64,000 nt of DNA from Leucoraja erinacea. Its lineage: Eukaryota. Where the stretch lies: positions 22,444,001 to 22,508,000 of the forward strand of contig NC_073401.1 of the NCBI RefSeq assembly GCF_028641065.1, in the 5' to 3' direction. Under the pieces are notes generated by a model, which did no database searches, had not been told where the DNA came from, and saw nothing but the letters and a program-made list of their open reading frames with translations. The translations under genes and the position numbers were made by a program. Below, one piece after another: positions 1 through 43,194 of the stretch; the stretch's first letter is position 1, and each line of letters begins with the position of its first letter.

Positions 1-1164
1 CAGAAATCTTACAAATGCCACTGTTGCTTGTGTCGCCACCACCACCTTCGCCAACGCCTTCACAGTCCTCACCAACCTCTGTATATAAAATGTCCATGCG
101 TCTCTCTCCTTAAAGCTATGTCATCTAGTCCTTGATATTTCCACTCTGAGGGGAAATGGTAATCATTCGCTGCCCTATCTATGACTCATAATTGTATATA
201 ATTCTAGCAGGTCTCCCCTGATAGTCAACGGTTACAGGGAAAACAACCCAATTCTGTCCAACCTGTGCTCGTAGTTCAGGTATCATGCTGGTAAACATCC
301 GCTGAGCCCTTTACAAGGCCTATAATTTCCATCTAGTATCAGAGCGACCAGAAATGATGGCAGTACCCGAAATGCAGCCTAGCAAAAGTCCTATAAAAGT
401 TAGCATCATGACTCGCCTGCCCTTATCCTGAATGCCCTGCCCAATGAAGGAAAACATACAATATGCATTCTCACCACTCTATATAGTAGTGTTGCCACTG
501 AAGGAGATATAGACTTGGTTCCCAAAATTCCTCTGTACTTCAATACTGTTGTTATTAATCGAAAGTAGATACAAAATGCTGGAGTATGTCAGCGGGTCAG
601 GCAGCGTCTCGTATATTTCCCCTCATAATCGACCCCTCCCCCAGCAGTTCAATGCTCTGGTTAATCTGCATCTATCATTTCATCTCTCATTTTTATACCT
701 ATCCCGCTGTTTACTTTGACAGCCTTCCTCACTGTCAGCAACCCAAACAATCTAGCTGTCATCTGTAAACGTATTAACTACTAGAGAAGGTGCAGAGACC
801 TTTGTCATGGCTCCTGCAATCTCGTCTGTTGTGTCTCTCAATAATCTGTCCATTCATGCACACTGCCCCTCAAGACACCCAACACCTGCTTCTTAATCAC
901 ACAGTGCCTTTGCATATGAATATTCGCCACATTGATCTCACTCTCCTCCTTGTCTTCTCCTTGATTAAAAGACGTACAACGACTATATGTTGGTTCACTC
1001 TCCCGCACGCGCACACACGCACACACTCACACGAATACAATAGCGCGCTCATGCACAAACCCATCCGAGAGTGACCACTAACCGTTGCATAAGATCCTTC
1101 TAATCACTTGGGAATCCGATCAATTTCATCCTGGAGTGAAATGGGTGGGGCTGGTATTGAGTGA

Positions 1165-1313
1165 GAGTAATGGGAGGCAACCGGGGAGCCCGGAGAAACC
1201 CATATTATCACGTGGGGAATGTGCAAACTCCCAGCCTTGGTCAGGATCGAACCCTGGTCTCTAGAGTTGTGAGGCAGCAGATCCACTCCACACAGGTGCG
1301 CCGCTGTGGCACC
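1165..1313 (-). mobile_element. V-SINE 5' part (duplicated at 33405-33553)
   Basis: B box GGTTCGATCC and gagtttgcacattcccc...gggtttctccggg core on the minus strand. Confidence 0.75.
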
Positions 1314-2249
1314 CTACAATATATAGTATATATGCCTCTGTAAAATTCTTAGTGGTATTCGCAGAACATTTGCAGACGGTATTTGACCTGATTAGTGTGT
1401 GCAAGACTGAAGTTTGCAGTCTTCATAAAACGTAGAACGTAGAACAATACAGCAAACGAACAAGCCCTTCGGCCCACAATTTCTCTGCAGACATGAAACC
1501 AAAACCAAACCTTATTTGCATGCACATGATCCGTATCCCTGCATTCTTATATATACTCACCAGCACCTCTCACATTAAAGCTATGCCATCTCGTCCTTGA
1601 TTTTTCCATTTTGGGGAGAAAGTGTTTTGACTCAATCCAATCTATGACTCTCATAATTCTGTATACTTTTGGGAGGTCCCATCTCATCCTCGGGCGTTGC
1701 AGGGAAATCAATCCAATTATGTCTCACCTCATCTTGTGGTTATTCTGGTTAAACTACATCTGCCATTTTGTCGCCCATTTCTGCACCTGGTCTCTAACCT
1801 GCTGCATTCCCCCTAATTGAGCATCATTCTGCTAAACATCCTCTGCATCCTTTGTAAAGCCTCCACATCCATCTAGTACTGGACCGCTCAGAAATGTAGA
1901 CAGTAGCCACACTGAAGCATAACAAAAGTCCAAAAAGTAGCATAATGACTCTATGGCCGTTATCCTCAATGTCCCGACCAATTAAGGCAAGCATGCCATC
2001 TACCTTCTTAGCACGATATCTAGTTGTATTGCCCATTTCAGAGAATTACGGACTTGGTTCCTACGCTCGCTCTGTGCACCAATACTGTTGTAATTCATTC
2101 TATATTTTCCCCCTTACAGTCGACCTCCTAAAGTGTCGCACCTCACACTTATTCTGGTTAAACTACATCTGCCATTTTGTCGCCCACTTCTGTACCTGGT
2201 CTCTTTCCTGCTGCATACGTTGACAGCCCGCAGTCCGCAACCCAAGCAA

Positions 2250-2558
2250 TAGAAACATAGAAACATAGAAATTAGGTGCAGGAGTAGGCCATTCGGCCCT
2301 TCGAGCCTGCACCGCCATTCAATATGATCATGGCTGATCATCCAACTCAGTATCCCGTATCTGCCTTCTCTCCATACCCCCTGATCCCCTTAGCCACAAG
2401 GGCCACATCTAACTCCCTCTTAAATATAGCCAATGAACTGGCCTCAACTACCTTCTGTGGCAGAGAGTTCCAGAGATTCACCACTCTCTGTGTGAAAAAA
2501 GTTCTTCTCATCTAGGTTTTAAAGGATTTCCCCCTTATCCTTAAGCTGTGACCCCTTG
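2250..2558 (-). mobile_element. CR1 3' end (duplicated at ~34490-34800)
   Basis: (CATAGAAA)n tail followed by the reverse complement of the CR1 3'UTR. Confidence 0.9.
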
Positions 2559-4576
2559 GTCAATCTTGGTGTAATCTGCAAATTTACTAACCAACCCATC
2601 TACATTTACAACCATGTAATTCATATATATCACACGCAACTGAGGAAGGTGCACAGGTGGCTGCAGAACTGCATAGGTTGTCGATCTCCTGTCTGGAAAG
2701 TGTCCTTCCACCACAACACTAACTTCTATCCGTAAAATAGTTCCAAATCCACACGTCCAAGTCACTGTTAATCCCGTGCAATTTAATCTTCTGGATCAGC
2801 CTACCATAGGGGACTTTATCAAATGCCTTATAAAATCCACGTGCACGATGTCCACTGCCGGGTTATTGATTACCTTGGTCACCTCCTCAAAACCTTCGAT
2901 CAAGTTAGTAAGGCACCAGCTGCCGCGGATAAAGCCATGCCAATTAATATGTCTAAGTAAACCATTCTCTTCCAAATCCCAATCTGAAGAATCCTCTCCG
3001 TAGTTTATCATTCACTGATTAGTGGCGCACTGGCCCATAAATTCCCGGATTCTCTCTACTTCCTCGGTTAAACAAAGGATCAACACTAATTACTCTCCAG
3101 TCCTCAGACCTGGCCTGTTGCTGGAGGTGCAGGGATCTTCGTCGAGGCTCCTGCAATATTCCCTTTTGTCTCTCGAATAACTCGTTGATGTATCCACCTC
3201 AACGATTACCTTTCTTCACGACCACCAATACCCCCTCCTTCTTAGTCTCACAGTGCCCTTACATCCATGAAACTACCAGAGCAAAGAATATAGTAAAGAG
3301 AGGTTACAATATTACAGTTGCAGATAAAGTGCAAATAGATAATGCAAGGTCAATGAAGTAGGTTTGGAGACAACAGCGAGGAAGAAACGTCCCTGACTCT
3401 GGTGGTACATGTTTACAAGCTTTTGTGTCTTCTGTCCGATGGAAGAGCGGAGACCAGAGGGATAATGGTCTATGATCATGTTGGCCGCTTTCTGAAGCAG
3501 CGTAAAATGTCGTAAAATGACAGTCTCTGAAATGTAGACGGAGTCTATTGGGAGAGGTTGCTTTTGTGATAGACGAGGGTACATTAGCAACTCTCTGTAG
3601 CATTTAGAATTAACAATAATGTAATTGTTTACAGAGCTATCAACAGAATCTAGACTGCATATATCGACCATGGAGTGAAAGCACGCAGTAGAAACTGGTT
3701 TGATTTGATTTTCTGCCTAATGACTAATTGTGGCGACCAGTTGAGTTCCTCCTGCAATTTGTTTTTTTTTTAATCGCTCCACCTGAGAAGCATCTCCTTT
3801 AATGTGTCCATATGTCTACAGGCAGGTCAGCCTGGGAGGGAAGGTATTGCATTTGTATTTAGAGGTGCTCGGATTGGCGAACAATGGCAGAGATGGGGCA
3901 GCATGCAAGCAATCACGGCTGTACCTCGCGACACAGAATTTCCGAACCTAATTAAACTTTTCAACATTATCATTGTGGCGCCTCACATATTCGCGTACAC
4001 ATCCACCTACATTTTTACTGTGATGCATATCCCGGCTGCACATGGCCTTTATTTATCAATTACTTTCGGTCGGATGGCACAAAGTAATCACAAATCAGGA
4101 GGACGCACGACAAATATTCGCCTCACTCGTCTGGGTTAAAACCTCAGTAGTTCTGTCAATGTTCAATTTAATATTGTATGTGTAAATATTCTGGCAAATA
4201 CAGTAATAAATTGAATTGGCAGATGGTCGATTAGAATGTAATTAGAAGCAACTTGGCAAAAGATGCTTATGTAGTAAGAATGATTGATAAGTTTGTTGAT
4301 GGCACGAAAATTCGTGGCATTGTTAATATTGAGATTGCAGTCAGTTTGCAGATTGATGTTGATCACCTGGTCAAATGTGCAAGATAATGCCAAGTAGAAT
4401 TTAATCCTGGTAATTAGGTTCTGTTTTACATTGCGGCATTAAATAAGTGTAAGTCACAAATCATGGAGGGTAGGTTCCAGCATTGAGCAGCAACATTCGT
4501 TAATCTGCAAGTCTAAAGTTCCATGCAAATGACAGGGCAGGTATAACATGCTAATGAAGGCTTATGAAGTACTTTC

Positions 4577-4936
4577 TCAGATGGCAACCGCTCTTTGGAT
4601 GAGGCATCTATTCCTCAGATCACCGCTAGTTTCTCAATGTTCATCTTAGACCTGTGCCCTTCAGGCTTGCACACCTCTGCTATGAATATAAGTGCCTTAT
4701 TGTCTGCGCTATAGATGTCCCTCATATTTTTTTAATATCCCAATCATGTTTGCAAAACAGCCTCAGATGCACCTAACAAAACGGCACCGGCATATCGCGG
4801 CTTTCCTTATAGCTGAAACATTCCATCACAGGCAATATCAAGATGAAGATTCTGTGCAATCTCTCCAGAATATTCATGTGTGTCCGATGCAATGCTGATG
4901 AGAACGGCACCGAGTATTCTAGCTGTGACATAACCA
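4577..4936 (-). repeat. Inverted copy of 36874-37233
   Basis: tcagatggcaaccgctctttggatgaggca...gtgacataacca is the reverse complement of tggttatgtcac...tccaaagagcggttgccatctga; ORF 4692(+) matches ORF 36912(-). Confidence 0.95.
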
Positions 4937-6488
4937 CTACAAAATCCATGTAGACAACATCCACCGCCCTACCTTCATCAATCACCTTCCTCGTCTCGTC
5001 AAAACATGATCAAATTAGTAAAATAGGAGTCATTTACAAAGTCATTCCCATGAATGCCCCTAATTAACCCATTCTCTTTCAAAGTGGAGTAAATCCTATC
5101 TGGGAGAATCCTCAACAATAGCTTCTCTACCACAGACGAGAGGATCGCCGGCCTATATATTTTTTCTAGATTCTCTCTACCTCCCTTCTCAAATAAAGGA
5201 ACACAATTACCTACTTTCCAGCGCTAATCACATCGCGTGTGGCTAGAGAACATCAAGGATCTCCGACAATGCTTCTGCTATCTGCCCGTCTCAATAATCT
5301 GGGACCTCCTGCGGATTTATCTGTTGTAATGCTTTTCAAGAGCCCCAACACTTCCCCAATCTTAATCCCAAATGTTCATGGCATAATAGCATTCGCCACA
5401 CTGAGCTCACAATCCACCATGTCCTTGTCCTTTACCTCTGTAATCCAACGCAACAAAAAGGTCTGAAAAAGGGTCTCGACCCGAAACATCACCCATCCCT
5501 TCTCTCCAGAGATGCTGCCTGTCCCGCTGCGAGTCCAGCTATTTATGGCTATCTTCGGTTTAAACCAGCATCTGCAGTTTCTTCCTGTGCAACAAAGAGC
5601 TTTATCACTTACCCATTTGGTCATTCTAATCGCCCACGTGAGTTCTTTCCCCATTGTTTTATGTTCATCAAAAGCTGACTTCATCTTCAAGTAATGGGTT
5701 GGGTAATCAGAACTAAAAAGGAAAGCATTCTTCGCTGAGTGCAATTACAAAGTTTTGGATTCTTTACTGCAGGTGATCGCCAATACCTATATATATTCCA
5801 GATAGTAATATAGATATAATAATACAATAATATAATATATTATTATACCTATGGCACTATGTACACGTTATATTTCCGGTTTCGGCATATCCTGCACCTA
5901 AAAAAGCAGCCTCCAAATCTCATTTTTTCACATTATAAGGAGTGCATTTAAACTAATTAAAGTCCATACAGATTAATTTTCATATATTCAGACTGTAGAT
6001 CTTACCTTTCAGTTTGAGTTGATTCACAAAGTTCCACAACTTTGTGTTGCAGCATCTCAGAAGGGACTTTGCTTTCAAGACTTTCTTCCACTTCTATCCA
6101 CTTAGCTGCACATTTTTCAGACTTCTTAATGCTTTTCTCACTAAATTCAATTACCCTGCTGCAAGTTTCCCGAACAAAGAACCTTCATCGGAATCTCCAG
6201 TAAAACAGGCATCAGTGAAGCCCTCTCAGCTATGATGTGTGCTAGCCTGAAACAAAGCGCGTGATTGGCCAACTGGCAGACAACTCAATGTTAAATATCC
6301 TTTGATTGGACTAAAAATACCCGATATTTTCCAGTTTTTCTCTAATTTAATAAAAATGTGCAAGTCTTGTTCATGACGAGTTTCAGGGGTGATTTATATA
6401 ATTTTTTTAAACAATATATGAACATTTCATGTAGTTCTGTGACTTGGGTCACGAAACACTGGAATAAAGCTCCTCGGCCCACAGCCTA

Positions 6489-6720
6489 TTAGCCACAAGG
6501 GCCACATCTAACTCCCTCTTAAATATAGCCAAATGAACTGGCGTCCTTACCTTCTGTGGCAGAGAATTCCAGAGATTCACCACTCTCTGTGTGAAAAATG
6601 TTTTTCTCATCTCGGTCCTAAAGGATTCCCCCTTTATCCTTAAACTGTGACCCCTTGTCCTGGACTTCCCCAACATCGGGAACAATCTTCCTGCATCTAG
6701 CCTGTCCAACCCCTTGACAA
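6489..6720 (-). mobile_element. CR1 3' fragment (paralog ~51309-51530)
   Basis: Minus-strand KGLDRLDAGRLFPMLGKSRTRGHSL. Confidence 0.85.
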
Positions 6721-6749
6721 TGTTGTATCTTCTACCGAAGATAACCACA

Positions 6750-7180
6750 AACGCACGACAGGGAGCATCTATAGAGAAGGAATTGGTGACCTTTCGGGTC
6801 GAGACCCTTCTTCAGACTGAGAGTCAAGGGAGAGGTGGACATAGAGATAAGGAGGGGTTATGTGTGAAACGAGAGATCAGAGGGGACGTGAATCAAGGAA
6901 AATGTAGAATAGGTCATTGTTAGCTGAGGGGAAAGCGGCAACGAGGCACACAAAGTTATTTTAATCAGGACAAGGGGGACTAGTCGGTGAGCTAGGATGG
7001 GGGAGGGGATGCAGAGAGAGAGAAAACAAGGGTTACTTGAAGTTAGAAAAGTCAATATTCATAACGCTGAGTTGTAAGCTGCCCAAGTGGAATATGAGGT
7101 GCTGTTCCTTCAGTTTGCGTTGGACCTCACTCTGACAGTGGAGGAAGCCCAGGGTAAAAAGGTCAGTATGGGAATTAAAG
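6750..7180 (-). mobile_element. Penelope-like 3' end, minus strand (partial paralog ~51565-51868)
   Basis: Reverse complement of the terminal repeat and of the GIY-YIG C-terminal region. Confidence 0.7.
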
Positions 7181-8715
7181 TGTTAAATACAGGAATAAGC
7201 ACTTCACAGTCGTTGTGAGAGAGATGAAACAACGGCATTATTAATACTCAAATCGAAGTTATGGCGATGCTCGAAATGCCCGACTGGAATATTTGCTCCA
7301 GTTCAGGTAAACTGGTGAAATTGCAGGATGTCAGTTCAAATTTTAAAAGGAGTGAAGCGGAATCAGCTCGTGATATATGGAGTTTGAGATGCACCAACTG
7401 GTCTTCTGACGCCCGAAGATAAAACAGAACGGATTACCATTCCTTAACCAGATAGGTGTGGGACAATGCAGAGCTCATTTAACCACATCTGTGCACATCT
7501 GGACACAAATTTAAGCATTGAGGTGTTCGTGTCAAGCGCAGCACCTAGCTACGGACTAGAAAGTCCCAGAATGTCCCTGGACAGCCGCCAACGTGATGTA
7601 ATATCAGAAAGGGAATTAATTGTTGCGATGTTATTCCATGCAGTTGGAGAGTAGAGGAGAGGACTTGTCGAATGGATAAACTCCACTGAGAGCAAGTCAT
7701 TATGAATCACGATCCTGGCCACAAATAATGACATTTCTAAGGTTTTTTTGGTAGTGATTTCACCGTTGTAACCAGAGTTGAAGCTTCGACGCAGAAAGTG
7801 AAATGCAGACTCCGAATGCATGAATAGCACCAATGCATTCAAAATGTCTGTAACGTGGCGGGGATTAAAATTGTCTCCATGGGCCGAAGAGCTTGTTTCC
7901 GCACTGTATCTAAACTAAACCAAATAAACTAAACAAAGGAAAATCAAGGTCACACGACACAGACGAAAAATGGAACGCCGTGTGAAGTGCTTCAGTGGAA
8001 AAGAAAAGATTAAATTGCTAAAGTTCAAGTGAGTTTATTGTCACGTGTCCCTGATAGGACAATAAAATTCTTGCTTTGCTTCAGCACACAGAACACAGTA
8101 GGCATTTACTACAAAACAGATCCATGTGTCCATATACCATTATATAAATATATGCACACATGAATAAATAAACTGATAACGTGCAAATAACAGATAATGG
8201 GTTATTAACAATCAGAGTTTTGTCCGAGCCAAGTTTAATAGCCTGATGGCTGTGGGGAAGCAGCTATTCCCGAAGATAGCAGGGAGATGAGTGTGTGGCC
8301 AGGATGGTGTGGGCATCACACCATCAAGTTATGTTTGCTTAGGACACACACGTCAGAGTTATTTTTTTTAAATATGCCACTGCAGGACTTGGACATATTC
8401 TGCAATCGCGGCGAACTTTCCAGTACGGTAATAAGCAAGATAGGCAATCTTCAAGCAGTTGTGGTTCAGATAAAACGTCGAATCAAGGCCCAATCTTCTT
8501 TCTCTGGAGGAGATAAAGGTGCCACGCCTCTACTGGTGGAGCAGTGATACTCCGACGAAAGATATGCAATAAATTACACAATTAAAACATGTGGTCCATA
8601 CATTTTTCATTGCTTTTTCGATCAAAGATTTTATTGTCATTCAAAAATACACTGACAAATGCAAGTCTGAACGAAATTTCGTTGCATCTGTCTCACCGTG
8701 CAACATAAAATAACA

Positions 8716-8770
8716 AAAGGATAAAATAGATAAAAGGATAAAATAGATAAAAAAGATAAAATAGATAATA
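8716..8770. repeat. A-rich (GATAAAA)-type minisatellite (paralog ~52846-52900)
   Basis: ggataaaatagataaaa repeated ~3 times. Confidence 0.75.
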
Positions 8771-9329
8771 GTGGCGGCACATTATATGGAATTCAAGAGT
8801 CGCAGCAAATCAACCACAGAATTGCTTCACGTTAGCTGCAACATTCCTGCATCGCATCAAGGGACAGTACCGATGGATACAGTGAAATATAACATTGAGA
8901 TACTTTTTGATTATGTCTTAATGATTAAGTTTTGTTGTGTTGAATCGCACTCGTGTCATGACTGATGTTAGACAGATGCAGACGATGCCTTTTTTCAAAA
9001 TAAGAAATAAAAGATGCCTTGGGATAAATAATTAGTGAATAAACAGATACAGAGCAGAACAAGAAACGCCAGTTGCGTGGAGCAGTCCCAAGTGTACATG
9101 GAATCCCATACGAGAGTAATTGACATTAAGGTTGCAGATCAAAGTACTATCACTTCCTCACCATGGTCTTTCAGCCTCTCAACATCACTGCTTTTCAATG
9201 AACCCCGGTGCAACAATCAATCGACAATTCTAGACACATTTCCCATGAGGACTGAGATAGGGAAAAACATTTTCAGCCAGAGTTGTGAATCTATGGAATC
9301 CCTCTCCTATTCCTTCCTTCCTTCCTTCC

Positions 9330-9369
<40 letters not shown>

Positions 9370-11389
9370 TCCTAAATTGAAGAGGGAGAAACATCCCCTG
9401 GTCCTCGCCATTCACCTCACCAGCCTCCGTATCCAACACACCATCATCTAACATCACTGACAGAGAGTTGTGAATCTGTGGAATTCTCTGCCACCAAAGG
9501 CAGTGGAAGCCAATTCACTGGATGTTTTCAAGAGAGAGTTAGATTTAGATCTTAGGGCTAATGGAATCAAGAGATATGTGGAGAAACCAGGAACAGGTAC
9601 TGATTCTGGATGATCAGCCATGATCATATTGAATGGCGGTGCTGGCTCAAAAGGACCTATTTTCTATGTTTCTATGATTCCTTTATCGATTGTAGTACCT
9701 CTCCAAGGTAAATATGTTCAGTTTGCCATCAGAACATCAGAACAGTTCAGAATCTGAGCCCCCATGCTTATATTTTATTTTTTCTGAGGCTAATTTTAAT
9801 TGCAAATCTCTCATTACTGAACGAAATAAAAGATCACTCTCAACAATGTTATATCTTTTTATCCTATTACACCATATTATTTATGCTTGAAAACTGATTT
9901 TAACGGTTACAAACTAACACGTGAGCAGAACAATTTCTGTAATTTTGGATTCTTCCATTAAATCACGTTGAAATTGTTTTCGATTTCCATAATAATTAGA
10001 AACATGGGTCCAAATTCCTTCACTGCCCCGTTCAGTTCAGCTCATAATACAAATTATTCTTCCGCGGGTTCAGTGTCCTCCTTGGTGTCAAGCACATACT
10101 GGGCACCAATAGCGGATTTTGCACTTTCGCAATCACTTTGTAAATGACCCATTTTCTCACCAAAGTGGGGTTTTCCTGTTTCAGCCACAATGGTAACAGA
10201 CTCTGCTTGTGTCCCGATATCACAGACTGGCTTTGCAGTCATTGTATTCGAACAAAAATCAGTCCTCGATGACCACAGACTAACTGACCATGACGGGCAA
10301 CATCCGAGAACAGCAAAACTACAGGAACATGACCAACTGGTTTATCAACTGGGCTCCAACTTTGGTTGGAGCTCGGATTTTTAAGCTATATTCATGAACT
10401 AACTTTTTTTTAAATGAGTCATCGAGCAGTTGGTAGTAGGTTGCAATCACCATCTTAACCAATAATGTGGAGATAATTCCCGATAACACTATTGATTTAG
10501 GGATATTTGCCAGGGATGGCGGACTGGTTATGGGGAGACCTCCAACCCTGTGCCGCAGCCAGGTCAATGGGCATTTGTGGCAAAGTTAAGACTCGATATT
10601 GTTAATAACGTTGGATTTGAATAACACAAAATGGTGCTGGAAACGTGGCGACTATCGTGTGCCGTCTTAGTATCATGCACTATTCTTGCACTCTTGTAGC
10701 TTTATACTGCAACATTTGTTTACTAAACTGTAGGCAAAAAAAGAAATTTCACTGTACCTTGGCACATGTGACCATTAAAAACACACGTCAATGTAACCAT
10801 GTAATCGGCAAGAGGTCCACCTTCTTGATGCCCACAATGAAATCTGGTACATTCTCCAATGTGAATCATTTGAAAGGCATTGTTCTGTGCATGATAACCC
10901 CATCAATTTGTTTGGTGCAACCAGACTTTTGAGGTTGAAAGCATGTATAGACCAAAATGTCAAGGAATATGCCTGCCCTTTTCTCACCTGCAATATTGTT
11001 TGCCCAAAACCACTGTTCAAAATATTGCAAATAATCATTGGATTACCAAATTGTGCTAAAATCATGCATGGGTTTACATCTTATAAAGTGCTATCTCAAA
11101 ATCCATATAAACTATGTGCATGGACATTTTCCATGTCCATTGCACTACCTACACAATTAAAAGATGTGAACATGCTCAATAGACTTGTGCTACCCTTTAC
11201 ATGTCCATGTTGGCTCTCTCAAATCAAGAGACTTTTTTACTGTCAGCCTTTAATTACAAATGCCAATAACCTCCCAACAACTATTAATAAACTGACAAGT
11301 TTGAGCTTCCCTCACCGTTTTTAAATAATGGAACTGCATAAGTATTTTTGCAATTTAAGAGGGACAATTCAAGAAATAATCCCTATTGA

Positions 11390-14300
11390 TGATTATTGAT
11401 TTGGATGAGGGAATGCAACATCTCCAAGTTTGCGGATGACATGAAGCTGGGGGGCAGTGTTAGCTGTGAGGAGGATGCTAGGAGACTTGGATGGACTGGG
11501 TGAGTGGGCAAATGCATGGCAGATGCAGTATAATGTGGATAAATGTGAGGTTATCCACTTTGGTGGCAAAAACAGGAAAGTAGACTATTATATAAATGGT
11601 GGCCAATTAGGAAAAGGGGAGATGCAACGAGACCTGGGTGTCATGGTACACCAGTCATTGAAAGTAGGCATGCAGGTGCAGCAGGCAGTGAAGAAAGCGA
11701 ATGGTATGTTAGCATTCATAACAAAAGGATTTGAGTATGGGAGCAGGGAGGTTCTACTGCAGGTGAGACCACACCTGGAGTATTGCGTACAGTTTTGGTC
11801 TCCAAATCTGAGGAAAGACATTCTTGCCATAGAGGATGTGCAGAGAAGGTTCACCAGACTGATTCCTGGGATGTCAGGACTTTCATATGAAGAAAAACTG
11901 GATAGACTCGGTTTGTACTCGCTAGAATTTAGGAGATTGAGGGGGGATCTTATAGAAACTTACAAAATTCTTAAGGGGTTGGACAGGCTAGATGCAGGAA
12001 GATTGTTCCCGATGTTGGGGAAGTCCAGGACAAGGGGTCACAGTTTAAGGATAAAGGGGAAATCCTTTAGGACCTAGATGAGAAAAACATTTTTCTCACA
12101 GAAAGTGGTGAATCTCTGGAACTCTCTGCCACAGAAGGTAGTTAAGGCCAGTTCATTGGCTATATTTAAGAGGGGGTTAGATGTGGCCCTTGTAGCTAAA
12201 CTGATCAGGAGGTATGGAACGAAGGCAGGTACAGGATACCGAGTTGGATGATCAGCTATGATCATGATTGAGTAATGAGGAAGGGTTAGTTAGCAATCTT
12301 GTTGTACGTGCCCCCTTGGGCAAGAGTGACCATAATATGGTTGAGTTCTTCATTAGGATGGAGAGTGACATTGTTAATTCAGAAACAATGGTTCTGAATT
12401 TAAACAAAGGTAACTTTGAGGGTATGAGACGTGAATTGGCCAAGATTGACTGGCAATTAATTCTAAAAGGGTTGACGGTGGATATGCAATGGAAGACATT
12501 TAAAGACTGCATGGATGAACTACAGAAATTGTTCATCCCAGTTTGGCAAAAGAAGAAATCAGGGAAGGTAGTACATCCGTGGATAACAAGGGAAATCAGG
12601 GATAGTATCAAAGCGAAGGATGATGCGTACAAATTAGCCAGAAAAATCAGCATACCGGAGGACTGGGAGAAATTCAGAGACCAGCAGAGGAGGACAAAGG
12701 GCTTAATTAGGAAAGGAAAAATAGATTATGAAAGAAAACTGGCAGGGAACATAAAAACTGACTGCAAAAGTTTTTATAGATATGTAGAAAGAAAGAGATT
12801 AGTTAAAACAAATGTAGGTCCCTTGCAGTCAGAAACAGGCGAGTTGATCATGGGGAACAAGGATATGGCGGACCAATTGAATAACTACTTTGGTTCCGTC
12901 TTCACTAAGGAAGACATAAATAATTTGCCGGAAATAGCAGGGGACCGCTGGTCAGAGGAGTTGGAGGAATTGAGTGAAATCCAGGTTAGCCGGGAAGTGG
13001 TGTTGGGTAAATTGAATGGATTAAAGGCCGATAAATCCCCAGGGCCAGATAAGCTGCATCCCAGAGTACTTAAGGAAGTAGCTCCAGAAATAGTGGATGC
13101 ATTAGTAATAATCTTTCAAAACTCTTTAGATTCTGGAGTAGTTCCTGAAGATTGGCGGGTAGCAAACGTAACCCCACTTTTTAAGAAGAGAGGGAGAGAG
13201 AAAATGGGGAATTACAGACCAGTTAGTCTAACATCGGTAGTGGGGAAACTGCTAGAGTCAGTTATTAAAGATGGGATAGCAGCACATTTGGAAAGTGGTG
13301 AAATCATTGGCCAAAGTCAGCATGGATTTACGAAAGGTAAATCATGTCTGACGAATCTTATAGAATTTTTCGAGGATGTAACTAGTAGCGTGGATAGGGG
13401 AGAACCAGTGGATGTGGTGTATCTGGACTTCCAGAAGGCTTTCGACAAGGTCCCACATAAGAGATTAGTATACAAACTTAAAGTACACGGCTTGGGGGTT
13501 CAGTATTGATGTGGATAGAGAACTGGCTGGCAAACAGGAAGCAAAGAGTAGGGAGTAAACGGGTCCTTTTCACAATGGCAGGCAGTGACTAGTGGGGTAC
13601 CGCAAGGCTATCTCAGTGCTGGGACCCCAGCTATTTACAATATATATTAATGATCTGGATGAGGGAATTGAAGGCAATATCTCCAAATTTGCGGATGACA
13701 CTAAGCTGGGGGGGCAGTGTTAGGTGTGAGGAGGATGCTAGGAGACTGCAAGGTGACTTGGATAGGCTGGGTGAGTGGGCAAATGTTTGGCAGATGCAGT
13801 ATAATGTGGATAAATGTGAGGTTATCCATTTTGGTGGCAAAAACAGGAAAGCAGACTATTATCTAAATGGTGGCCGACTAGGAAAGGGGGAGATGCAGCG
13901 AGACCTGGGTGTCATGGTACACAGGCAGGCAGTGAAGAAAGCGAATGGTATGTCAGCTTTCATAGCAAAAGGATTTGTGTATAGGAGCAGGGAGGTTCTA
14001 CTGCAGTTGTACAGGGTATTGGTGAGACCACACCTGGAGTATTGCGTACAGTTTTGGTCTCCAAATCTGAGGAAGGACATTATTGCCATAGAGGGAGTGC
14101 AGAGAAGGTTCACCAGACTGATTCCTGGGATGTCAGGACTGTCTTATGATGAAAGACTGGATAGACTTGGTTTTATACTCTCTAGAATTTAGGAGATTGA
14201 GAGGGGATCTTATAGAAACTTACAAAATTCTTAAAGGGGTTGGACAGGCTAGATGCAGGAAGATTGCTCCCGATGTTGGGGAAGTCCAGGACAAGGGGTC

Positions 14301-14664
14301 ACAGCTTAAGGATAAGGGGGAAATCCTTTAAAGCTGAGATGAGAAGAACTTTTCTCACACAGAGAGTGGTGAATCTCTGGAACGCTCTGCCACAGAGGGT
14401 AATCGAGGCCAGTTCATTGGCTATATTTAAGAGGGAGTTAGATGTGGCCCTTGTGGCTAAGGGGATCAGAGGGTATGGAGAGAGGGCAGGTACGGGATAC
14501 TGAGTTGGATGATCAGCCATGATCATATTGAATGGCGGTGCAGGCTCGAAGGGCCGAATGGCCTACTCCTGCACCTAATTTCTATGTTTCTATGATCATA
14601 TTGAATGGCGGTGCAGGCTCGAAGGGCCAAATGGCCTACTCCTGCACCTATTTTCTATGTTTCT
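11390..14664 (+). mobile_element. 5'-truncated CR1 LINE hosting a nested CR1 in its 3'UTR
   Basis: C-terminal RT region ([16 protein letters not shown]...RPHLEYCVQFWSP...RRLRGDLIETYK); the 3'UTR is split at 12265 and resumes at 14600. Confidence 0.9.
12266..14589 (+). mobile_element. Nested CR1 LINE ORF2 fragment (~2.3 kb, frameshifted RT)
   Basis: ORF 12268-13509 (KSPGPD, NYRPVSLTS, QHGF, YLDFQKAFDKVPH), then GVPQG and FADD in shifted frames; (TTTCTATG)n tail; absent from the paralog at ~56245. Confidence 0.95.
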
Positions 14665-15429
14665 AAGAGAGGCAATAACCAAAGTGTCTGCTGTTTACCA
14701 GCCTTTAAATTCCAGCATGGAAACCTTTTAGTCCTCGCCAACATTTCTGTCAATTGTAGCGAGTTTCAGTCCTCAAATTATTAAATTCCCTTGTATATTG
14801 AATGTATTTTTGCAAGCGGATTGGGATTAAGATGGTTTTGTACAATGGTATGGGGTGTTGTTGAAATGGTACCTGGAGTATTGTTCACAGTTTTGCTCCC
14901 CTTAACGTAAAAGATGGATACAGTAGCAACAGAAATGCCAAATGAAATCCACGATGCCATTTCCTGAGATTAACAGGTTGTCCTACTGAGGATAGTCCTA
15001 TCAAATGGAGCTAAACAGATTGTGTCTATATTTTCTAGAGCTTAGAACTAAGATGACCCTACAGAGAAATAGAAGATTTTGAGCAGGCATGACAGGGTAG
15101 ATGTTAAGATGTTCCTACTAGTAGGAGAGTCTTGAACAAGGAGGCATGTTACAAAATAATACATCAGTCATATAAAACAGAGGAGCATGACATTTTATTT
15201 TTCAATGGATGGTGAAGACCTGGAAGTATTTACATCGTTTCCAGTCTTCTAAGTTAAGAATATTTTTTACTTTTTTCCATTCACCATCATTTAGTGTTAC
15301 GATATATCCCAAATTTTATATCATGATGGGTGTATATTTGGAATGTCAGTTATTTTCACAATGAGAAGTATTGATCATACCCAAAACCTAACATCTTACA
15401 GTATATACAGCTCATATATATATATATTA

Positions 15430-16245
15430 GCATATAATCCTCCAACATTTTCGCCACCTTCAATGGGATCCCACTACTAGCCACATCTTACCATCTCCAC
15501 ACCTTTCTGCTTTCTGCAGAGACCGTTCCCCCCAAAGCTCCCATGTCAACTCGGCCCTTCCCACCCAAAACCACCCCTTCCCCAGGTACTTTCCACTGCA
15601 ACCACAGGAGATGCACACACCTTTCCCTTTACCCCCCCCCCCCCCCCCCCCCCCCCCCCCGACTCTATCCAAGAACCCAAACAATCTTTCCAGGTGAGGC
15701 AGAGGTTCACTTGCACCTCATCTACTGTATCCGCTGTTCCAGTTGACAACTTCTCTACATCGACAAAACCAAGTGCAGGCTCGGCGATCGTTTAGCTGAA
15801 CACCTCCGCTCAGTCCGTCTTAACCTACCTGATCTCCCAGTGGCTCAGCACTTCAACTCCCCCTCCCATTCCAAATCTGACCTTTCTGTCCTGGGCCTCC
15901 TCAACTGTCAGAGTGAGGCCCAGTGCAACTTGGAGGAGCAGCGCCTCATATTTTGCTTGGGTAGTGTACACCCGTGGTATGAACATTGACTTCTCTAACT
16001 TCAGCCCGCTCTTGCTTTCCCTCTCTAACCCCTCCCCCCCCCCCTTCCCAGTTCTCCCACTAGTCTTAATGTCACCGACTACATTCTTTGTCCTGCCCCC
16101 TCCCCTGACATCAGTCTGAAGAAGGGTCTCGACCCGAAACATCACCCATTCCTTCTCTCCAGAGATACTGCCCGTCACACTGAGTTACTCCGGCATTTTG
16201 TGTCTACCTTCAATTTAAACCAGCATCTGCAGTTCTTTCCTATAT
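15430..16245 (+). mobile_element. Penelope-like element remnant (GIY-YIG endonuclease region + terminal repeat)
   Basis: Broken frame YCIRCS..LLYIDKTKCRLGDRLAEHLRSV..LPVAQHFNSPSH resembles the PLE GIY-YIG domain; followed by the CTGAAGAAGGGTCTCGACCCGAAAC terminal repeat. Confidence 0.8.
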
Positions 16246-17959
16246 GCTTTTTCTTTTCAGGCCCAACATTTAAATTATATCATAGAGTGATTATTGTTAT
16301 TTACCACTATATAAAGGGAACAATTACCTAAATCTCACAAATCATTCATGGTCTGTCCTCTAGAAAAGGCTGCTTCAGAAAGCTGCCTTAAATGTGCACA
16401 AATGTATTACCTTCCTCGCAAAGTATTCTGTTTTCCTGCTATATGTAAAATCAAAGTCTCCTTTTAAAAGTTTTATTTTTGCTGCTAGTCACAAAAATCT
16501 GGAATAACTCAGTGGGTTATGCAGCATTTGCTGAATAATGGAATAGGTGTTGCTTCGGGTCAAGACCCTTCTTCAGACTGAGCGTCAGGGGAGGGAGAAA
16601 CAAGAGATATGAAAAGGTACATGGAAAAAGTATATGAAAGTTCTGCAAATGGACAAATCAAAGCCAGCAAAGATGATCAAGGATAAATGGAGCACTTTGC
16701 GCCATCCTTATACCAATCTCCGACTATATATATTCCACAACATCACTGCCTTTGGGAGGCAGGTCGACAAGTCCTTTTCCAGTTTGTATCACATGTTCAA
16801 TTTTATCCCTATGGCTGCAATACTTTTGATTACTTACATTTTTCCTTATTAATACTCAACAACATCAGGCCACTCATCCTCCTGGTGCAGTTCCCCAATC
16901 TGATAAACTTGAATATTATCTCCCAAATATGACCATGTTATAACTTTCTCAGTAATAGCTTCAACATTACATTATTTAACCTGCATTGGAGCTTCTAATT
17001 CACTCTATTTATTTATAACACTTCATGCATAATTACATAAATGTATTATCTGGGAAATAAAGTTTAACATTTACTGCTTCCCTGACATCACCTGACATCT
17101 TACAGCATGAACAAACTTTTATTTCTTGTTCTTACTGCAAAATTTTCCTTCACTTCATCCACATGATTTATTGCCAGTTTCAACCTGAACTAAGTTTCGA
17201 TCTTTAAAGTTGAAAAGTATGCAAATAATCACCAGCAATCTTGATATCTCTGCAATGATTAAATTACTTTCTGCTTTTGGAGACACATCTGGCTAAACAA
17301 TAACATCACAGCGACGACTCGTGTCTATATTGTGCCTATCATGCAATAAAATATCCAGTTATGCTTCAGTGGAGTGTTAGCAGACAAACAATGACACCAA
17401 GCCTCCCAGAGGGACCATTAGAACAAGCAGGCAGAACTGGTTACAATGATAGCTTTAAAATATCAAATCAGCCTTTCCAGCTAGGCCCAACAAGGCGACT
17501 CCGGATTGTCAAAGCTGTCACAGCCAGACATAAAAACATATTATATGCACAAGTGGTTGTTCTATTCAACAGCCAAAAATCTGTAGCCTCCCTTTGATCT
17601 AGTATTTTGTTGGTTCACATGCTTAATCAATGGTGTTTTATCATTAATGTTTTATTATTATGAATGTTCAGTGTTTTCTGAGTCATACGTAACTGTCACT
17701 GTATGTCATGTTGTTGCTTGTGGGAGGAGCACCAAGGCAAATTCCTTGTTTGTGAATATTGGGCCAATAAACTTACTTACTTACTTAGATCCCTGAATAT
17801 GACATGATTCCTTTGTAACTAGTGTAATCCATTTTTAACTTGATTAATACCAAACATTGTGCCAATGCATGAAGCATTTCCATTCCAACAAGTAGTGGTT
17901 CACTGTTTTGCTTCTAATTGTGTGTACTGTATTCATTGGCCTGCTCTAGACTGTCCTTG

Positions 17960-18602
17960 TGAGACGGGTTCATGTGCACTTTATCTACTGTATCCGGTGG
18001 CCTCCTTTATATCGGCAAGACCAAGTGTAGGCTCGGCAACCATTTCGCCAACACTTATGCTAGGCTGGATGTATCAGTTGCTAATGATTTTAACCCCTCG
18101 TCCCATTTCTATACTAACCTTTCTGTCCTGGGCTTCCTTCTTTGCCAGAGTGAGATCACTCACAAAATGGAGGAAAAGCATCTCATATTCCATTCTGGAA
18201 GTTTACAACCCAGGCGGTATTAACATTGCATTTGGTAATTTTGAGTAACTACGTAACCGCTCCTCTCCCTTCTTCCCTGCCCTTCCTATCCCCCACCCCA
18301 CTATCCACCTATTTATCCATCTACATTACATCCTCTGGCTTCACAATTCAGAGCTCTTTAATCCTTTTGTCTCATATATTCTGTCTTTTCATATCTGGCC
18401 CTTGTCCAACTATACACCTATCAAAACCCCTCTTTACCTGTATCAACCCATTACCTGCCAGACTTTGTCCTGCCCCTCCTCTTCCCAGATTTCTTCCCGC
18501 CATCCCCCTCCCCCCACCCCAGAATCAGTCTAATGAAGGGTTCCGACCCAAAATCACACCAATTCATGTTCTCCAGATATATTGCCTGACCCACTGAGTT
18601 AC
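17960..18602 (+). mobile_element. Penelope-like remnant (paralog ~60160-60815)
   Basis: GLLYIGKTKCRLGNHFA...VANDFN..SH...EEKHLIF in ORF 17972-18223; decayed terminal repeat. Confidence 0.75.
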
Positions 18603-19334
18603 ACCCGAAGTGGGCAGCCATGTTAAAATTATTATTTTTAAATCCATTTCCATATCAAGTTAGAGAGATAATACAACAGGTTGCTAACACTCACCTCATT
18701 CATGAAGAAAGTGGGAAGCCGATCTGGATAGCGGAATTTTTTTTTTTGGTTATATAGAAACATAGAAATTAGGTGCCGGAGTAGGCCATTCGGCCCTTTG
18801 AGCCAGCACTGCCAATCAATATGATCATGGCTAATCATTCAAAATCCGTACCCTCGTTCCTGCTTTCTCCCCATATCCCTTGATTCCAATAGCTTTGACA
18901 TTATCCTTCGTAAGGTTGACATTTTGGAAACTTAGTAAGGAGGCAAGATGATTTGGTTGGTAGAATAGGGATATCCAAAGCTTGGGATTATTGGGACAAA
19001 GCTTCAGTTTTGTATCTATTCAGTTATTATTCTTGCGTCAGTATTTGATGTCTTGAAGGTAGTGCATATACACATTCCTTCATTCTATTCCCTTCCTGAA
19101 TGTTATGAGGACACACAAAAACATGACACATTGGATAGTAAATGTCAAAACATTAGGCATCTATCTAAAGATGATAGATTGCATTTTAAAGTAATCTATG
19201 TTTAATCTTGATATGGCAAAATGAGGAATTGAAAGTCACATCAGTTAGCACATCAGAAAGCCAACTGAGCAATTACTGCCATCTGGTGCCAGATCCTAGC
19301 AGTCATACCACTTTCGGTGGCTTGCTAAAAAATA

Positions 19335-19940
19335 ACAGAGTAGGAGTAAACGGGTCCTTTTCACAATGGCAGGCAGTGACTAATGGGGTACCGCAAGGCT
19401 CAGTGCTGGGACCCCAGCTATTTTTTACAATATATACAATGCCGTAGAGGGAGCACAGAGTAGGTTCACCAGACTGATTCCTGGGATGTCAGGACTTTCA
19501 TATGAAGAAAGACAGGATAGAATCGGCTTGTACGTGCTAGAATTTAGAAGATTGAGGGGGGATCTTATAGAAACATACAAAATTCTTAAGGGGCTGGACA
19601 GGCTAGATGCCGGAAGATTGTTCCCGATGTTGGGGAAGTCCACAACAAGGGGTCACAGTTTAAGGATAAGGGAGAAATCTTTTAGGACCGAGATGAGAAA
19701 AACATTTTTCACACAGTGGTGAATCTCTGGAATTCTCTGCCACAGAAGGTAGTGGAGGCCAATTCATTGGCTATATTTAAGAGGGAGTTAGATGTGGCCC
19801 TTGTGGCTAAAGGGGTCAGGGGGTATGGAGAGAAGGCATTGGATACTGAGTTGGATGATCAGCCATGATCGTACTGAGTGGCGGTGCAGGCTCGAAGGGC
19901 CGAATGACCTACTCCTGCACCTATTTTCTATGTTTCTATG
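19335..19940 (+). mobile_element. CR1 3' fragment with internal deletion
   Basis: [11 protein letters not shown] joined directly to the distal RT end; TTTCTATG tail. Confidence 0.88.
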
Positions 19941-20375: not shown

Positions 20376-20475
20376 NNNNNNNNNNNNNNNNNNNNNNNNN
20401 NNNNNNNNNNNNNNNNNNNNNNNNNNNNNNNNNNNNNNNNNNNNNNNNNNNNNNNNNNNNNNNNNNNNNNNNNNN
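20376..20475. other. Assembly gap (100 N)
   Basis: Exactly 100 N, the usual placeholder for a gap of unknown size. Confidence 0.99.
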
Positions 20476-28755: not shown

Positions 28756-28804
28756 ATGTCTTGCTGGATCTCTCTAGTCTATGCGTTAGTGTTTTCCGCA
28801 GCTT
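28756..28804 (+). CDS. Leader exon, cluster 1 (MSCWISLVYALVFSAA)
   Basis: ATG at 28756, hydrophobic 16 codons + 1 nt, donor GTGAGT at 28805; homologous to 45991-46039. Confidence 0.9.
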
Positions 28805-28921
28805 GTGAGTATTTACTTCAACCGACATGATATTTAATCTCGAGTACGATTAAACCTTTCTATCCGTGATAATTCTACTGTTATTAGTTAATATTCTACT
28901 TTTATCTGGTTTGTTTTCCAG

Positions 28922-29266
28922 ATATAAATGCGCAATTTGCACTAAATCAGCCGTCTTCAAAATCCACATCTCTGGGACAGAACGTGGAAATTGCCTGTAC
29001 CCTGTCTGGCGGCAGTTTAGGTACTACCACCGTTTATTGGTACCAGCAGATTCCCGGAGCGGTTCCGCGGTTTCTGTTCTACTATTGGTCGGGCAGCAGC
29101 ATTACTAGAGGCTAGGGAGTTTCTGAACGTTTCTCCGGATCAGTGTCAGGCAACACTGCAACATTGACAATATCGAACGTGCAGTCTAGGGACGCTGATG
29201 ACTACTACTGTGCTGTGTGGAAAGATGCTGTAATCTTCGGCAAAGGAACGAGGCTGGGTATTGGCA
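28922..29266 (+). CDS. Germline-joined VJ exon, cluster 1 (interrupted by TAG at 29113)
   Basis: Acceptor ttttccag. Reads [113 protein letters not shown]. Has conserved Cys, WYQQ, DYYC and FGxG; donor GTAAGT at 29267. Confidence 0.92.
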
Positions 29267-29292
29267 GTAAGTACAATACCTTCTATCTTTGC

Positions 29293-29465
29293 GTAGACAC
29301 AAAAAGCTGGAGTAACGCAGCGAGACAGGGAGCATCTCTGGAGAGAAGGAAAGGGTTTTAGGAAGGAACGGCAGATGTTGGTTTAAACCGAAGATAAGCA
29401 CAACAAGCTGAACAGGCAGCATCTCTGCAGGAAATGTAAAGGCTCTGCAGTTCCTTCCTGCATAT
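29293..29465. mobile_element. Short Penelope-derived repeat in the cluster 1 J-C intron
   Basis: gtagacacaaaaagctggagtaac...gcatctctggagagaagg matches the same repeat family; absent from the cluster 2 intron. Confidence 0.65.
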
Positions 29466-41257: not shown

Positions 41258-41264
41258 GGGGGGT

Positions 41265-41302
<38 letters not shown>

Positions 41303-43175: not shown

Positions 43176-43194
43176 ATGGTATTATGAAGCTATT

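What the first reader, a model, noticed from the sequence alone, without database searches (positions are those of the whole stretch)
4560..4960. Complex deletion-inversion junction removes an entire intact antibody light-chain gene from one copy
Seen: the left copy follows 32241-36815 up to 4576, reads 37233->36874 inverted (4577-4936), then after 1 nt jumps to 49757. The skipped 36816-49756 (~12.9 kb) contains all of cluster 2. The first junction has TTTC microhomology plus a TC duplication. Established: short templated inversions at deletion breakpoints are typical of template switching (FoSTeS/MMBIR) or alternative end joining. Inference: because each gene is pre-joined, this removes one hard-wired VJ specificity, either as gene death in a paralog or as a presence/absence allele.
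Basis: partly seen in the sequence, partly recalled or inferred. Interest (0 to 1): 0.8.

Follow-up and report, generated by a model that had tools for sequence, protein, structure and literature searches.

The report
Deletion-inversion scar in duplicated antibody locus
One copy of a recently duplicated stretch of a skate antibody light-chain gene array has lost 12.6 kb, including a ready-made light-chain gene, through a rearrangement that left a 363-base piece flipped at the scar; the scar is real, but the type of rearrangement is well known and the lost gene was a spare copy in a large gene family.

Summary
The left copy (L, 1-19.4 kb) matches the right copy (R, 32.2-62.3 kb) up to 4576. Then 4577-4939 is R 37233-36871 inverted, and L resumes at R 49757. 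R 36816-36870 (55 bp) and 37234-49756 (12,523 bp) are missing from L. The larger gap holds the intact pre-joined VJ-C cluster 2.

The long form is ancestral. In R, one decayed LINE runs unbroken across three breakpoints and a second across the fourth. In L both are broken exactly at the junctions.

The junctions are not an assembly chimera. Independently built contigs of public runs bridge junction 1 (X1, no mismatch) and junction 2 (X3, another study). Both runs also carry R-type sequence.

This is a delINVdel complex rearrangement, a known class in human genomics. Template switching during replication and multi-break end joining cannot be told apart here.

Three things stay open: whether L and R are paralogs (favoured) or alleles joined across the N gap at 20376-20475, when the loss happened, and whether the lost copy was functional.

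The lost gene was a redundant duplicate in a large array, so this is ordinary birth-and-death evolution.

The parts
1..4576 (+). Left copy, block A. Collinear with R 32241-36815. It is cut by the window edge, so the duplication extends further left.
   Evidence: 99.19% over 4578 columns; 37 differences, only 10 of them in 1-3100 and 23 in the last 976 bp.
4576..4577 (.). Junction 1: end of A joined to the inverted patch, reading ...ACTTTC|TCAGATGG.
   Evidence: Bridged by X1 contig record 5 (4496-4653, 0 mismatches).
4577..4936 (-). Inverted patch B', the reverse complement of R 36871(36874)-37233.
   Evidence: 95.3%, 17 mismatches in 363, no gaps. On the minus strand it carries the C-terminal region of the old LINE-a.
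4937..4939 (.). Junction 2: an odd C at 4937, then a TA shared by both templates, then R 49757 onward.
   Evidence: Bridged by X3 contig record 25 (4876-5087, 1 mismatch, L-type letters on both sides).
4938..19436 (+). Left copy, block C. Collinear with R 49757-62316 in blocks of 93.6-98.5% identity, with copy-specific indels.
   Evidence: One L-specific LINE insertion at about 12272-14591 has an 8-bp duplicated target, ATGATCAT.
32241..36815 (+). Right copy, block A.
36816..36870 (+). 55-bp spacer present in R and absent from L (first deletion).
36871..37233 (+). Source of the inverted patch (B) in its ancestral orientation.
   Evidence: It lies inside LINE-a, which is contiguous here.
36522..37305 (+). 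Decayed LINE fragment a. It runs unbroken in R across breakpoints 36815/6, 36870/1 and 37233/4.
   Evidence: one tblastn segment aligns residues 31-193 of the window's own LINE ORF (62259-63200) to 36522-36998. Further segments align residues 257-292 of that ORF to 37189-37296 and the related ORF 40072-40656 to 37189-37305; 48.5 bits against 17.2 +/- 1.6 (maximum 21.6) in 100 shuffles.
37234..49756 (+). 12,523 bp present in R and absent from L (second deletion). It holds LINE copies at about 38.2-43.1 kb, other repeats and light-chain cluster 2.
45991..48961 (+). Cluster 2, an intact germline-joined light-chain gene. Leader 45991-46039 (GTGAGT donor), VJ exon 46163-46507 (YYC...FGKGT in frame, no RSS), C exon 48639-48961 including the stop.
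   Evidence: Pfam V-set 4.2e-16 and C1-set 5.7e-26. No heptamer or nonamer found.
49671..50171 (-). Decayed LINE fragment b (N-terminal half of the reverse transcriptase). It runs unbroken in R across breakpoint 49756/7 and is cut after ...VVYMDF in L at 4941.
   Evidence: The stretch strictly left of the breakpoint still scores 23.9 bits against 15.1 +/- 1.6 (maximum 21.9) in 200 shuffles, at the expected next residues.
49757..62316 (+). Right copy, block C.
20376..20475 (.). 100-N assembly gap between the two copies. It was not filled. It leaves the tandem placement of L and R dependent on scaffolding.
28756..30788 (+). Cluster 1, an older paralog about 80% identical to cluster 2, lying 1.45 kb upstream of block A in R. 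Its VJ exon carries an in-frame TAG at 29113-29115.

Best explanation
The window lies in a tandem array of germline-joined, lambda-like light-chain genes of a cartilaginous fish. Earlier notes of this scan name it as little skate; I did not check that.

A segment of at least 30-43 kb was duplicated in direct orientation, giving L (1-19.4 kb) and R (32.2-62.3 kb), now 93.6-99.2% identical by block. The ancestral form of the segment is the long one kept in R.

In L, a complex delINVdel rearrangement removed 55 bp and 12,523 bp and re-inserted the 363 bp between them in reverse orientation. This took away L's copy of light-chain cluster 2 with its promoter, leader, fused VJ exon and C exon.

Shown: the structure, the direction (long form ancestral), and the presence of both junctions in read-derived contigs.

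Inferred: it was one event. My preferred mechanism, at about 55%, is replicative template switching (FoSTeS/MMBIR type). In that model the nascent strand leaves the template at R 36815, copies the opposite strand from 37233 back to 36871 (a switch of only about 420 bp, within one fork), then jumps 12.5 kb to 49757.

The consequence is loss of a redundant duplicate, that is, birth-and-death turnover of a hard-wired light-chain gene. No unique specificity was lost.

The confidence given is for the core claim: a real, derived delINVdel in one paralog of a duplication.
For: Structure.

Direction: LINE-a is one unbroken tblastn segment in R across 36815/6 and 36870/1, and continues across 37233/4 (48.5 bits against a shuffle maximum of 21.6). 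The reverse transcriptase of LINE-b continues in R from ...VVYMDF straight into K-P-F-D-E-V-P-H-G-K-L-I across 49756/7. In L both elements stop at the junctions.

Reality: X1 contig 4496-4653 bridges junction 1 with 0 mismatches. X3 contig 4876-5087, from another sample and study, bridges junction 2 with L-type letters on both sides.

Both forms occur together. In X1, L-specific contigs have depth 16-18, R-specific contigs about 15, and shared sequence 22-30. X3 shows both letters at 5358.

Paralogy is favoured by 3-4% divergence over more than 14 kb, by copy-specific LINE insertions with target duplications, and by 435 bp at the L end that match nothing downstream of R.

The rearrangement class and its usual attribution to replication-based mechanisms come from PMC5338099 and PMC6286558. 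The latter reports a CEP78 allele of del 5.7 kb, inv 298 bp, del 9.9 kb, with nearly the same architecture.
Against: Junction 1 can be read as a blunt joint and junction 2 has only 2 nt of shared sequence plus one odd base. That fits classical or theta-mediated end joining of three or four simultaneous breaks as well as it fits template switching.

L and R sit on different contigs of the scaffold (N gap 20376-20475), and I could not measure single-copy depth, so a heterozygous allele placed in false tandem is not excluded.

X1 may be the individual the assembly came from, which would make its support for junction 1 independent of the assembler but not of the animal.

The timing is unknown. L may have been born rearranged in the duplication event itself, so that no working gene was ever removed.

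A two-step history, inversion of 36816-37233 followed by a deletion, cannot be excluded.
Confidence: 0.75

Rival explanations
1. L and R are two haplotypes of one locus that the assembler kept side by side across the N gap. The delINVdel is then a presence/absence allele of cluster 2 segregating in the population, not a change in a paralog.
For: A 100-N gap separates the two contigs. L-specific and R-specific contigs have about equal depth in X1, and shared sequence has about their sum, which fits a heterozygote as well as two fixed paralogs. Block A differs by only 0.3% over its first 3.1 kb. In two samples of another species label (X11, X12), only R-type letters are seen at 4881-4900, and the X12 contig there is the long form.
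Against: Divergence of 3-4% over more than 14 kb and copy-specific LINE insertions are far above usual allelic difference. Homology ends 435-940 bp before the end of the L contig instead of running to it. A second sample, X3, also carries both L-type and R-type letters. An unchecked note places the end of another light-chain array exactly 1453 bp before the window start. That equals the distance from the cluster 1 stop codon to block A in R, as expected if the tandem duplication continues upstream.
Confidence: 0.18
2. The rearrangement is real and derived in a paralog, but it was made by end joining of three or four simultaneous double-strand breaks (local shattering). The 363-bp fragment was religated backwards and the 55-bp and 12.5-kb fragments were lost. 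No replicative template switching was involved. This rivals only the mechanism step of the best explanation, and its confidence is conditional on the rearrangement being real.
For: Junction 1 reads as a blunt joint or as 4 nt of homology plus 2 extra bases. Junction 2 has 2 nt of homology and one odd base. Short insertions and 0-4 nt of homology are typical of end joining (established knowledge).
Against: The flipped piece comes from only 55 bp beyond the first breakpoint, which is the pattern expected of a strand switch within one replication fork. Published delINVdel cases are mostly attributed to replication-based mechanisms (PMC6286558). The patch shows somewhat more substitutions (4.7%) than its flanks (2.4-2.8%; P 0.006-0.03, or 0.10 against a 3.3% rate), which would fit error-prone synthesis but is weak evidence.
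Confidence: 0.4
3. The short form is ancestral, and R gained 12.9 kb, including cluster 2, by insertion together with a local inversion.
For: None beyond the formal symmetry of any insertion/deletion comparison.
Against: An insertion would have had to restore, to the codon, the reading continuity of two unrelated decayed LINE fragments at all four breakpoints.
Confidence: 0.02
4. The junctions are an assembly chimera and do not exist in any genome.
For: The region is repeat-rich and close to a scaffold gap.
Against: Logan contigs built independently from raw reads bridge junction 1 (X1, 81 and 77 bases on either side, 0 mismatches). They also bridge junction 2 (X3, 62 and 150 bases on either side, 1 mismatch).
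Confidence: 0.02

Closest known systems
delINVdel complex structural variants (CNV-flanked inversions) described in human genomes: Collins et al. 2017, PMC5338099; Sanchis-Juan et al. 2018, PMC6286558
   Same: An inverted segment flanked by a deletion on each side, with two novel junctions in cis showing little or no microhomology and repeats at the breakpoints. The CEP78 case (del 5.7 kb, inv 298 bp, del 9.9 kb) has nearly the same dimensions as this one (del 55 bp, inv 363 bp, del 12.5 kb).
   Different: This is an old event in one copy of a segmental duplication in a cartilaginous fish, not a fresh variant against a reference genome. The ancestral state had to be inferred from LINE continuity rather than from parents or population data.
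FoSTeS/MMBIR replicative template switching (Lee, Carvalho and Lupski 2007; Zhang et al. 2009, as cited in PMC6286558)
   Same: A templated inverted insertion copied from a few hundred bases away, followed by a longer forward jump, with short microhomology possible at both joints.
   Different: Microhomology is at most 4 nt (with 2 extra bases) and 2 nt, so the defining signature is not clearly met. The process itself cannot be observed.
Germline-joined light-chain gene clusters of skates and sharks (Anderson et al. 1995, PMC2192082; review PMC5192425)
   Same: The lost gene's surviving twin (cluster 2) has a leader, an in-frame fused VJ exon without RSS, and one C exon 2.1 kb downstream. This is the described organisation. 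Turnover by duplication and loss is the accepted mode of evolution for such multi-cluster families.
   Different: To my knowledge from the searches run, no paper describes this particular duplication or deletion, or a breakpoint-level account of cluster loss in a skate.

Membership tests
delINVdel complex structural variant | An inverted segment flanked on both sides by deleted sequence, relative to the other form | tested here: met
   del 36816-36870 (55 bp), inv 36871-37233 (363 bp), del 37234-49756 (12,523 bp).
delINVdel complex structural variant | The long, collinear form is the ancestral state, so the event is a deletion and not an insertion | tested here: met
   two decayed LINE fragments are contiguous in R across all four breakpoints and broken in L.
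delINVdel complex structural variant | The novel junctions exist in real DNA molecules | tested here: met
   contigs of runs X1 (junction 1) and X3 (junction 2) bridge them with 31 or more bases on each side.
delINVdel complex structural variant | All breakpoints arose in a single mutational event | not testable with these tools
   A two-step history, inversion then deletion, would give the same sequence.
FoSTeS/MMBIR product | Microhomology of 2-5 nt or more at each junction | tested here: inconclusive
   junction 1 has TTTC only if 2 extra bases are allowed, and is otherwise blunt. Junction 2 has TA, with an odd base beside it.
FoSTeS/MMBIR product | A templated insertion copied from nearby sequence, in either orientation | tested here: met
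   a 363-bp inverted copy whose source starts 55 bp beyond the first breakpoint.
FoSTeS/MMBIR product | Raised point-mutation density at the junction tract | tested here: inconclusive
   17 of 363 differ (4.7%) against 2.4-2.8% in the flanks. P is 0.006-0.03, but 0.10 against a 3.3% rate. The lineage of each change is unknown.
RAG/RSS-mediated excision | A heptamer (CACAGTG) at the cut sites | tested here: not met
   no heptamer or consensus nonamer within 80 bp of any of the four breakpoints.
Non-allelic homologous recombination between repeats | Homologous repeats in direct orientation at the two deletion ends | tested here: not met
   no self-match between the breakpoint regions; the two LINE fragments are inverted relative to each other and cover non-overlapping parts of the element.
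Germline-joined Ig light-chain cluster of cartilaginous fish | A leader exon plus an in-frame fused VJ exon with no RSS | tested here: met
   with Pfam V-set 4.2e-16. YYC...FGKGT is in frame, there is no heptamer or nonamer, and the donor and acceptor sites are present.
Germline-joined Ig light-chain cluster of cartilaginous fish | A single C1-set constant exon downstream with matching splice phase and a C-terminal cysteine | tested here: met
   (C1-set 5.7e-26). Splice phase 1 on both sides, and the protein ends ...STCM.
Germline-joined Ig light-chain cluster of cartilaginous fish | Isotype assignment (lambda/type II versus sigma-cart/type I) | tested here: inconclusive
   The nearest named relative is a predicted 'lambda-1 light chain-like' protein of Mustelus asterias, 70% identical over the C domain. 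The search with the VJ exon was blank and the PDB hits do not discriminate. Earlier notes call the array lambda (unchecked).
Germline-joined Ig light-chain cluster of cartilaginous fish | Expression of the gene | not tested

The most novel reading that the evidence does not exclude
The short form may be a presence/absence variant of a hard-wired (non-rearranging) light-chain gene, either still segregating in skates or specific to one of two sister species. Individuals or species would then differ in their germline-encoded antibody repertoire by whole genes. The scar may also preserve an error-prone replication signature, since the flipped patch carries 4.7% substitutions against 2.4-2.8% beside it.
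Probability: 0.2. Interest if true: 0.45.

Novelty: new member of a known kind. Interest (0 to 1): 0.3.

Why it matters
It gives a base-resolved, direction-resolved example of how copy number changes in a family of antibody genes that cannot rearrange, where each gene is one fixed specificity. The sequence of events is duplication of a multi-gene block followed by loss of one member through a complex rearrangement. That bears on how such hard-wired repertoires turn over. It is an illustration of an accepted process (birth and death of immune genes) by a known class of mutation, not a new principle. As a method, decayed transposon fragments that span breakpoints proved enough to tell deletion from insertion without an outgroup genome.

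Tried and rejected
- Pfam on the short ORF pieces around the junctions found nothing useful. The LINE identity of these pieces showed only when the window's own longer LINE ORFs (RVT_1) were used as tblastn queries, and for LINE-a only with word size 2.
- The word-index protein search with the VJ exon found nothing at E<=1e-15. The length window excludes full-length light chains, so this blank says little.
- The same search with the C exon gave only three hits, two of them under bacterial names.
- PDB sequence searches did not resolve the isotype, because multi-domain antibody chains dominate the hits.
- RAG involvement was rejected: there is no heptamer or nonamer near any breakpoint. The nonamer-like ACAAAATCC just right of 49757 has no heptamer at a 12- or 23-bp spacing (read by eye).
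- Recombination between the two LINE fragments was rejected. They are inverted relative to each other and cover non-overlapping parts of the element.
- A palindrome or hairpin trigger was not found; only weak inverted repeats of 10-18 nt are present.
- Copy number could not be derived, because every laid base lies inside the duplicated region and no single-copy reference depth was available.
- For organism D (X11, X12), the L form was not detected at junction 2, but contigs prove presence, not absence.
- The spliced light-chain protein was not joined or searched as one sequence.
- The N gap was left untouched.
Full report
**1. Observation**

A self-comparison of the window shows two long direct copies. 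L 1-4576 matches R 32241-36815 at 99.19%. L 4577-4939 matches R 37233-36871 in reverse orientation at 95.3%, with 17 mismatches in 363 bases and no gaps. L 4938-7057 matches R 49757-51868 at 97.2%. Collinear blocks of 93.6-98.5% identity then continue to L 19436 / R 62316.

At junction 1, L reads ...ACTTTC|TCAGATGG. R continues ...ACTTTC|ATTG, and the inverted template reads ...CATTTC AGATGG. The joint therefore has either TTTC homology plus two extra bases or no homology at all.

At junction 2, the patch ends ...ACCA at 4936. Base 4937 is a C found in neither template. The TA at 4938-4939 is shared by both templates.

Relative to R, L lacks 36816-36870 (55 bp) and 37234-49756 (12,523 bp) and keeps 36871-37233 flipped, for a net loss of 12,578 bp.

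**2. What is in the window**

Two light-chain genes are present.

- Cluster 2 has a leader at 45991-46039 with a GTGAGT donor. Its VJ exon at 46163-46507 has YYC...FGKGT fused in frame and no heptamer or nonamer. Its C exon at 48639-48961 has phase-1 splice sites on both sides of the intron. Pfam gives V-set 4.2e-16 and C1-set 5.7e-26. The gene is intact.
- Cluster 1 (28756-30788) is an older paralog, about 80% identical to cluster 2. It carries an in-frame TAG at 29113-29115.

The rest of the 12.5-kb interval missing from L is made of LINE copies with RVT_1 ORFs and other repeats. Cluster 2 is the only gene lost.

The nearest named relative of the C domain is a predicted lambda-1 light chain-like protein of Mustelus asterias, 70% identical. 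Earlier notes of this scan call the genome little skate and the array lambda, and place a six-gene array ending 1453 bases before this window (unchecked). That 1453 equals the distance from the cluster 1 stop codon (30788) to the start of block A in R (32241). The match is what one would expect if the duplication continues to the left and includes a twin of cluster 1.

**3. Direction of the change**

I used the window's own LINE ORFs as tblastn queries.

- Left breakpoints: one decayed LINE (a, plus strand) aligns in R as a single uninterrupted segment from 36522 to 36998. It then aligns again at 37189-37305. It therefore crosses breakpoints 36815/6, 36870/1 and 37233/4. The main segment scores 48.5 bits, against 17.2 +/- 1.6 (maximum 21.6) for 100 shuffles.
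- Right breakpoint: a second decayed LINE (b, minus strand) aligns from 50171 down to 49671. Its reverse transcriptase motif ...VVYMDF is followed directly by KPFDEVPHGKLI across 49756/7. The part strictly left of the breakpoint alone scores 23.9 bits against a shuffle maximum of 21.9. It also sits exactly at the next expected residues.

In L, LINE-b stops after YMDF at 4941, and LINE-a is split and partly flipped. An insertion into R could not have restored two unrelated decayed elements to the codon. The long form is therefore ancestral, and L is derived.

**4. Reality of the junctions**

One run search and one laying of contigs on 2600-6450 were available.

- X1 (organism A): a 158-base contig covers 4496-4653 with no mismatch, bridging junction 1 with 81 and 77 bases on either side.
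- X3 (another sample and study): a 212-base contig covers 4876-5087 with one mismatch, bridging junction 2. It carries L-type letters at the diagnostic sites on both sides. Its single difference, 4900 G>C, is the letter of R, so L is itself polymorphic or has changed since.

Both forms are present in each run. X1 also holds R-type contigs. Record 2 carries the letters of R at all eight sites where it differs from L. L-specific contigs have depth 16-18, R-specific contigs about 15, and shared sequence 22-30. X3 shows both letters at 5358.

In two samples under another species label (X11, X12), only R-type letters are seen at 4881-4900. The X12 contig there runs on into unlike sequence at 4936, as the long form should. 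The short form was therefore not detected in those samples, although contigs cannot prove absence. The chimeric-assembly reading is rejected.

**5. Paralogs or alleles, and timing**

The two copies lie on different contigs of the scaffold, with 100 N at 20376-20475 between them. A false tandem of two haplotypes is therefore formally possible, and the equal depths in X1 fit both readings.

Four points argue for paralogs:

- Divergence is 3-4% over more than 14 kb.
- There are copy-specific LINE insertions. One in L, at about 12272-14591, has an ATGATCAT target duplication.
- Homology ends at or before the 3' end of a LINE (19436-19940), 435-940 bases before the contig end, and the last 435 bases match nothing else in the window.
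- A second sample also holds both forms.

I put paralogs at about 0.75-0.8.

The first 3.1 kb of block A are 99.7% identical, falling to 97.6% near the junction. This suggests recent gene conversion between the copies. It fits the homogenised FR3-J tract between clusters 1 and 2, which has 7 differences in 157 bases against 42 in 191 for the rest of the exon.

The date of the deletion cannot be read from the patch. B' descends from L's own copy of B, so its divergence from R reflects the age of the duplication. L may even have been born rearranged.

**6. Mechanism**

No RSS heptamer lies within 80 bases of any breakpoint. No direct repeats flank the deletion. The two LINE fragments are inverted relative to each other and cover non-overlapping parts of the element. 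No notable palindrome is present. RAG excision and homologous recombination are therefore rejected.

What remains is a one-step complex rearrangement, with two candidate mechanisms:

- Replicative template switching. The first switch goes to the opposite strand only about 420 bases ahead, as within one fork. The second jumps 12.5 kb.
- End joining of three or four breaks, with one fragment religated backwards.

The junctions carry 0-4 nt and 2 nt of homology, with one or two extra bases, and they fit both mechanisms. The patch has more substitutions than its flanks (4.7% against 2.4-2.8%; P 0.006-0.10 depending on the rate used). This weakly favours error-prone synthesis. I put template switching at about 55%.

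**7. Comparison with what is known**

The architecture is the delINVdel class of CNV-flanked inversions catalogued in human genomes (PMC5338099). A published CEP78 allele has del 5.7 kb, inv 298 bp, del 9.9 kb and is attributed to FoSTeS/MMBIR (PMC6286558).

Germline-joined light-chain clusters are a long-known feature of skates. Reports include at least 89 joined type I clusters in Raja (PMC2192082), lambda genes joined in all species studied, and type I genes all joined in skates (PMC5192425). The literature searches found no description of this particular event.

**8. Verdict**

The structural interpretation is supported and is now polarised and backed by reads. The functional weight is smaller than claimed, because the gene removed was the twin of cluster 2, which survives intact in R, within a large array.

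This is a new example of a known kind of mutation acting in a known mode of gene-family evolution. Interest is 0.3. The most novel reading still open is a presence/absence polymorphism, or a species difference, in a hard-wired antibody gene.

Noticed in passing
window 29113-29115: Cluster 1 has an in-frame TAG at the start of FR3 in its fused VJ exon. Its leader, splice sites and C exon look intact. It is either a pseudogene or a base error in the assembly.
   Followed up: partly
window 29116-29272 vs 46357-46513: The FR3-CDR3-J part of clusters 1 and 2 differs at 7 of 157 bases, against 42 of 191 in the first part of the same exon.
   Followed up: partly
window 1-4576 vs 32241-36815: There is an identity gradient inside block A: 10 differences in the first 3.1 kb (99.7%) but 23 in the last 976 bases (97.6%), while block C is 96-97% identical. 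Recent conversion between the two copies is likely.
   Followed up: partly
window 12272-14591: A LINE insertion is present in L only. It is flanked by an 8-bp ATGATCAT target duplication and has an open 413-aa ORF with RVT_1 (12268-13506). Several copies in the window are 86-96% identical, so the family was active after the duplication.
   Followed up: partly
window 19436-19940 vs 62316-63283; 63284-64000: L/R homology ends at or before the 3' end of a LINE that carries a 460-bp internal deletion in L. After it, R starts another copy of 14666-15385 (96.7%), while L continues into 435 unique bases and the N gap. The array looks shaped by LINE-associated rearrangements.
   Followed up: partly
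window 5438-5695: Summed contig word-depth here reaches about 12 million in three runs. This indicates an extremely abundant short repeat, probably a SINE; a related piece lies at about 44.1-44.4 kb.
   Followed up: no
proteins P0001 and P0003: Proteins filed as hypothetical proteins of Aeromonas veronii and Salmonella enterica are 71-75% identical to this light-chain C domain and carry C1-set. This is most likely cartilaginous-fish DNA contaminating bacterial assemblies.
   Followed up: no
window 4900: The junction-2 contig of run X3 has C where the window has G, and C is the letter of R's source segment. The short form therefore varies between samples.
   Followed up: no
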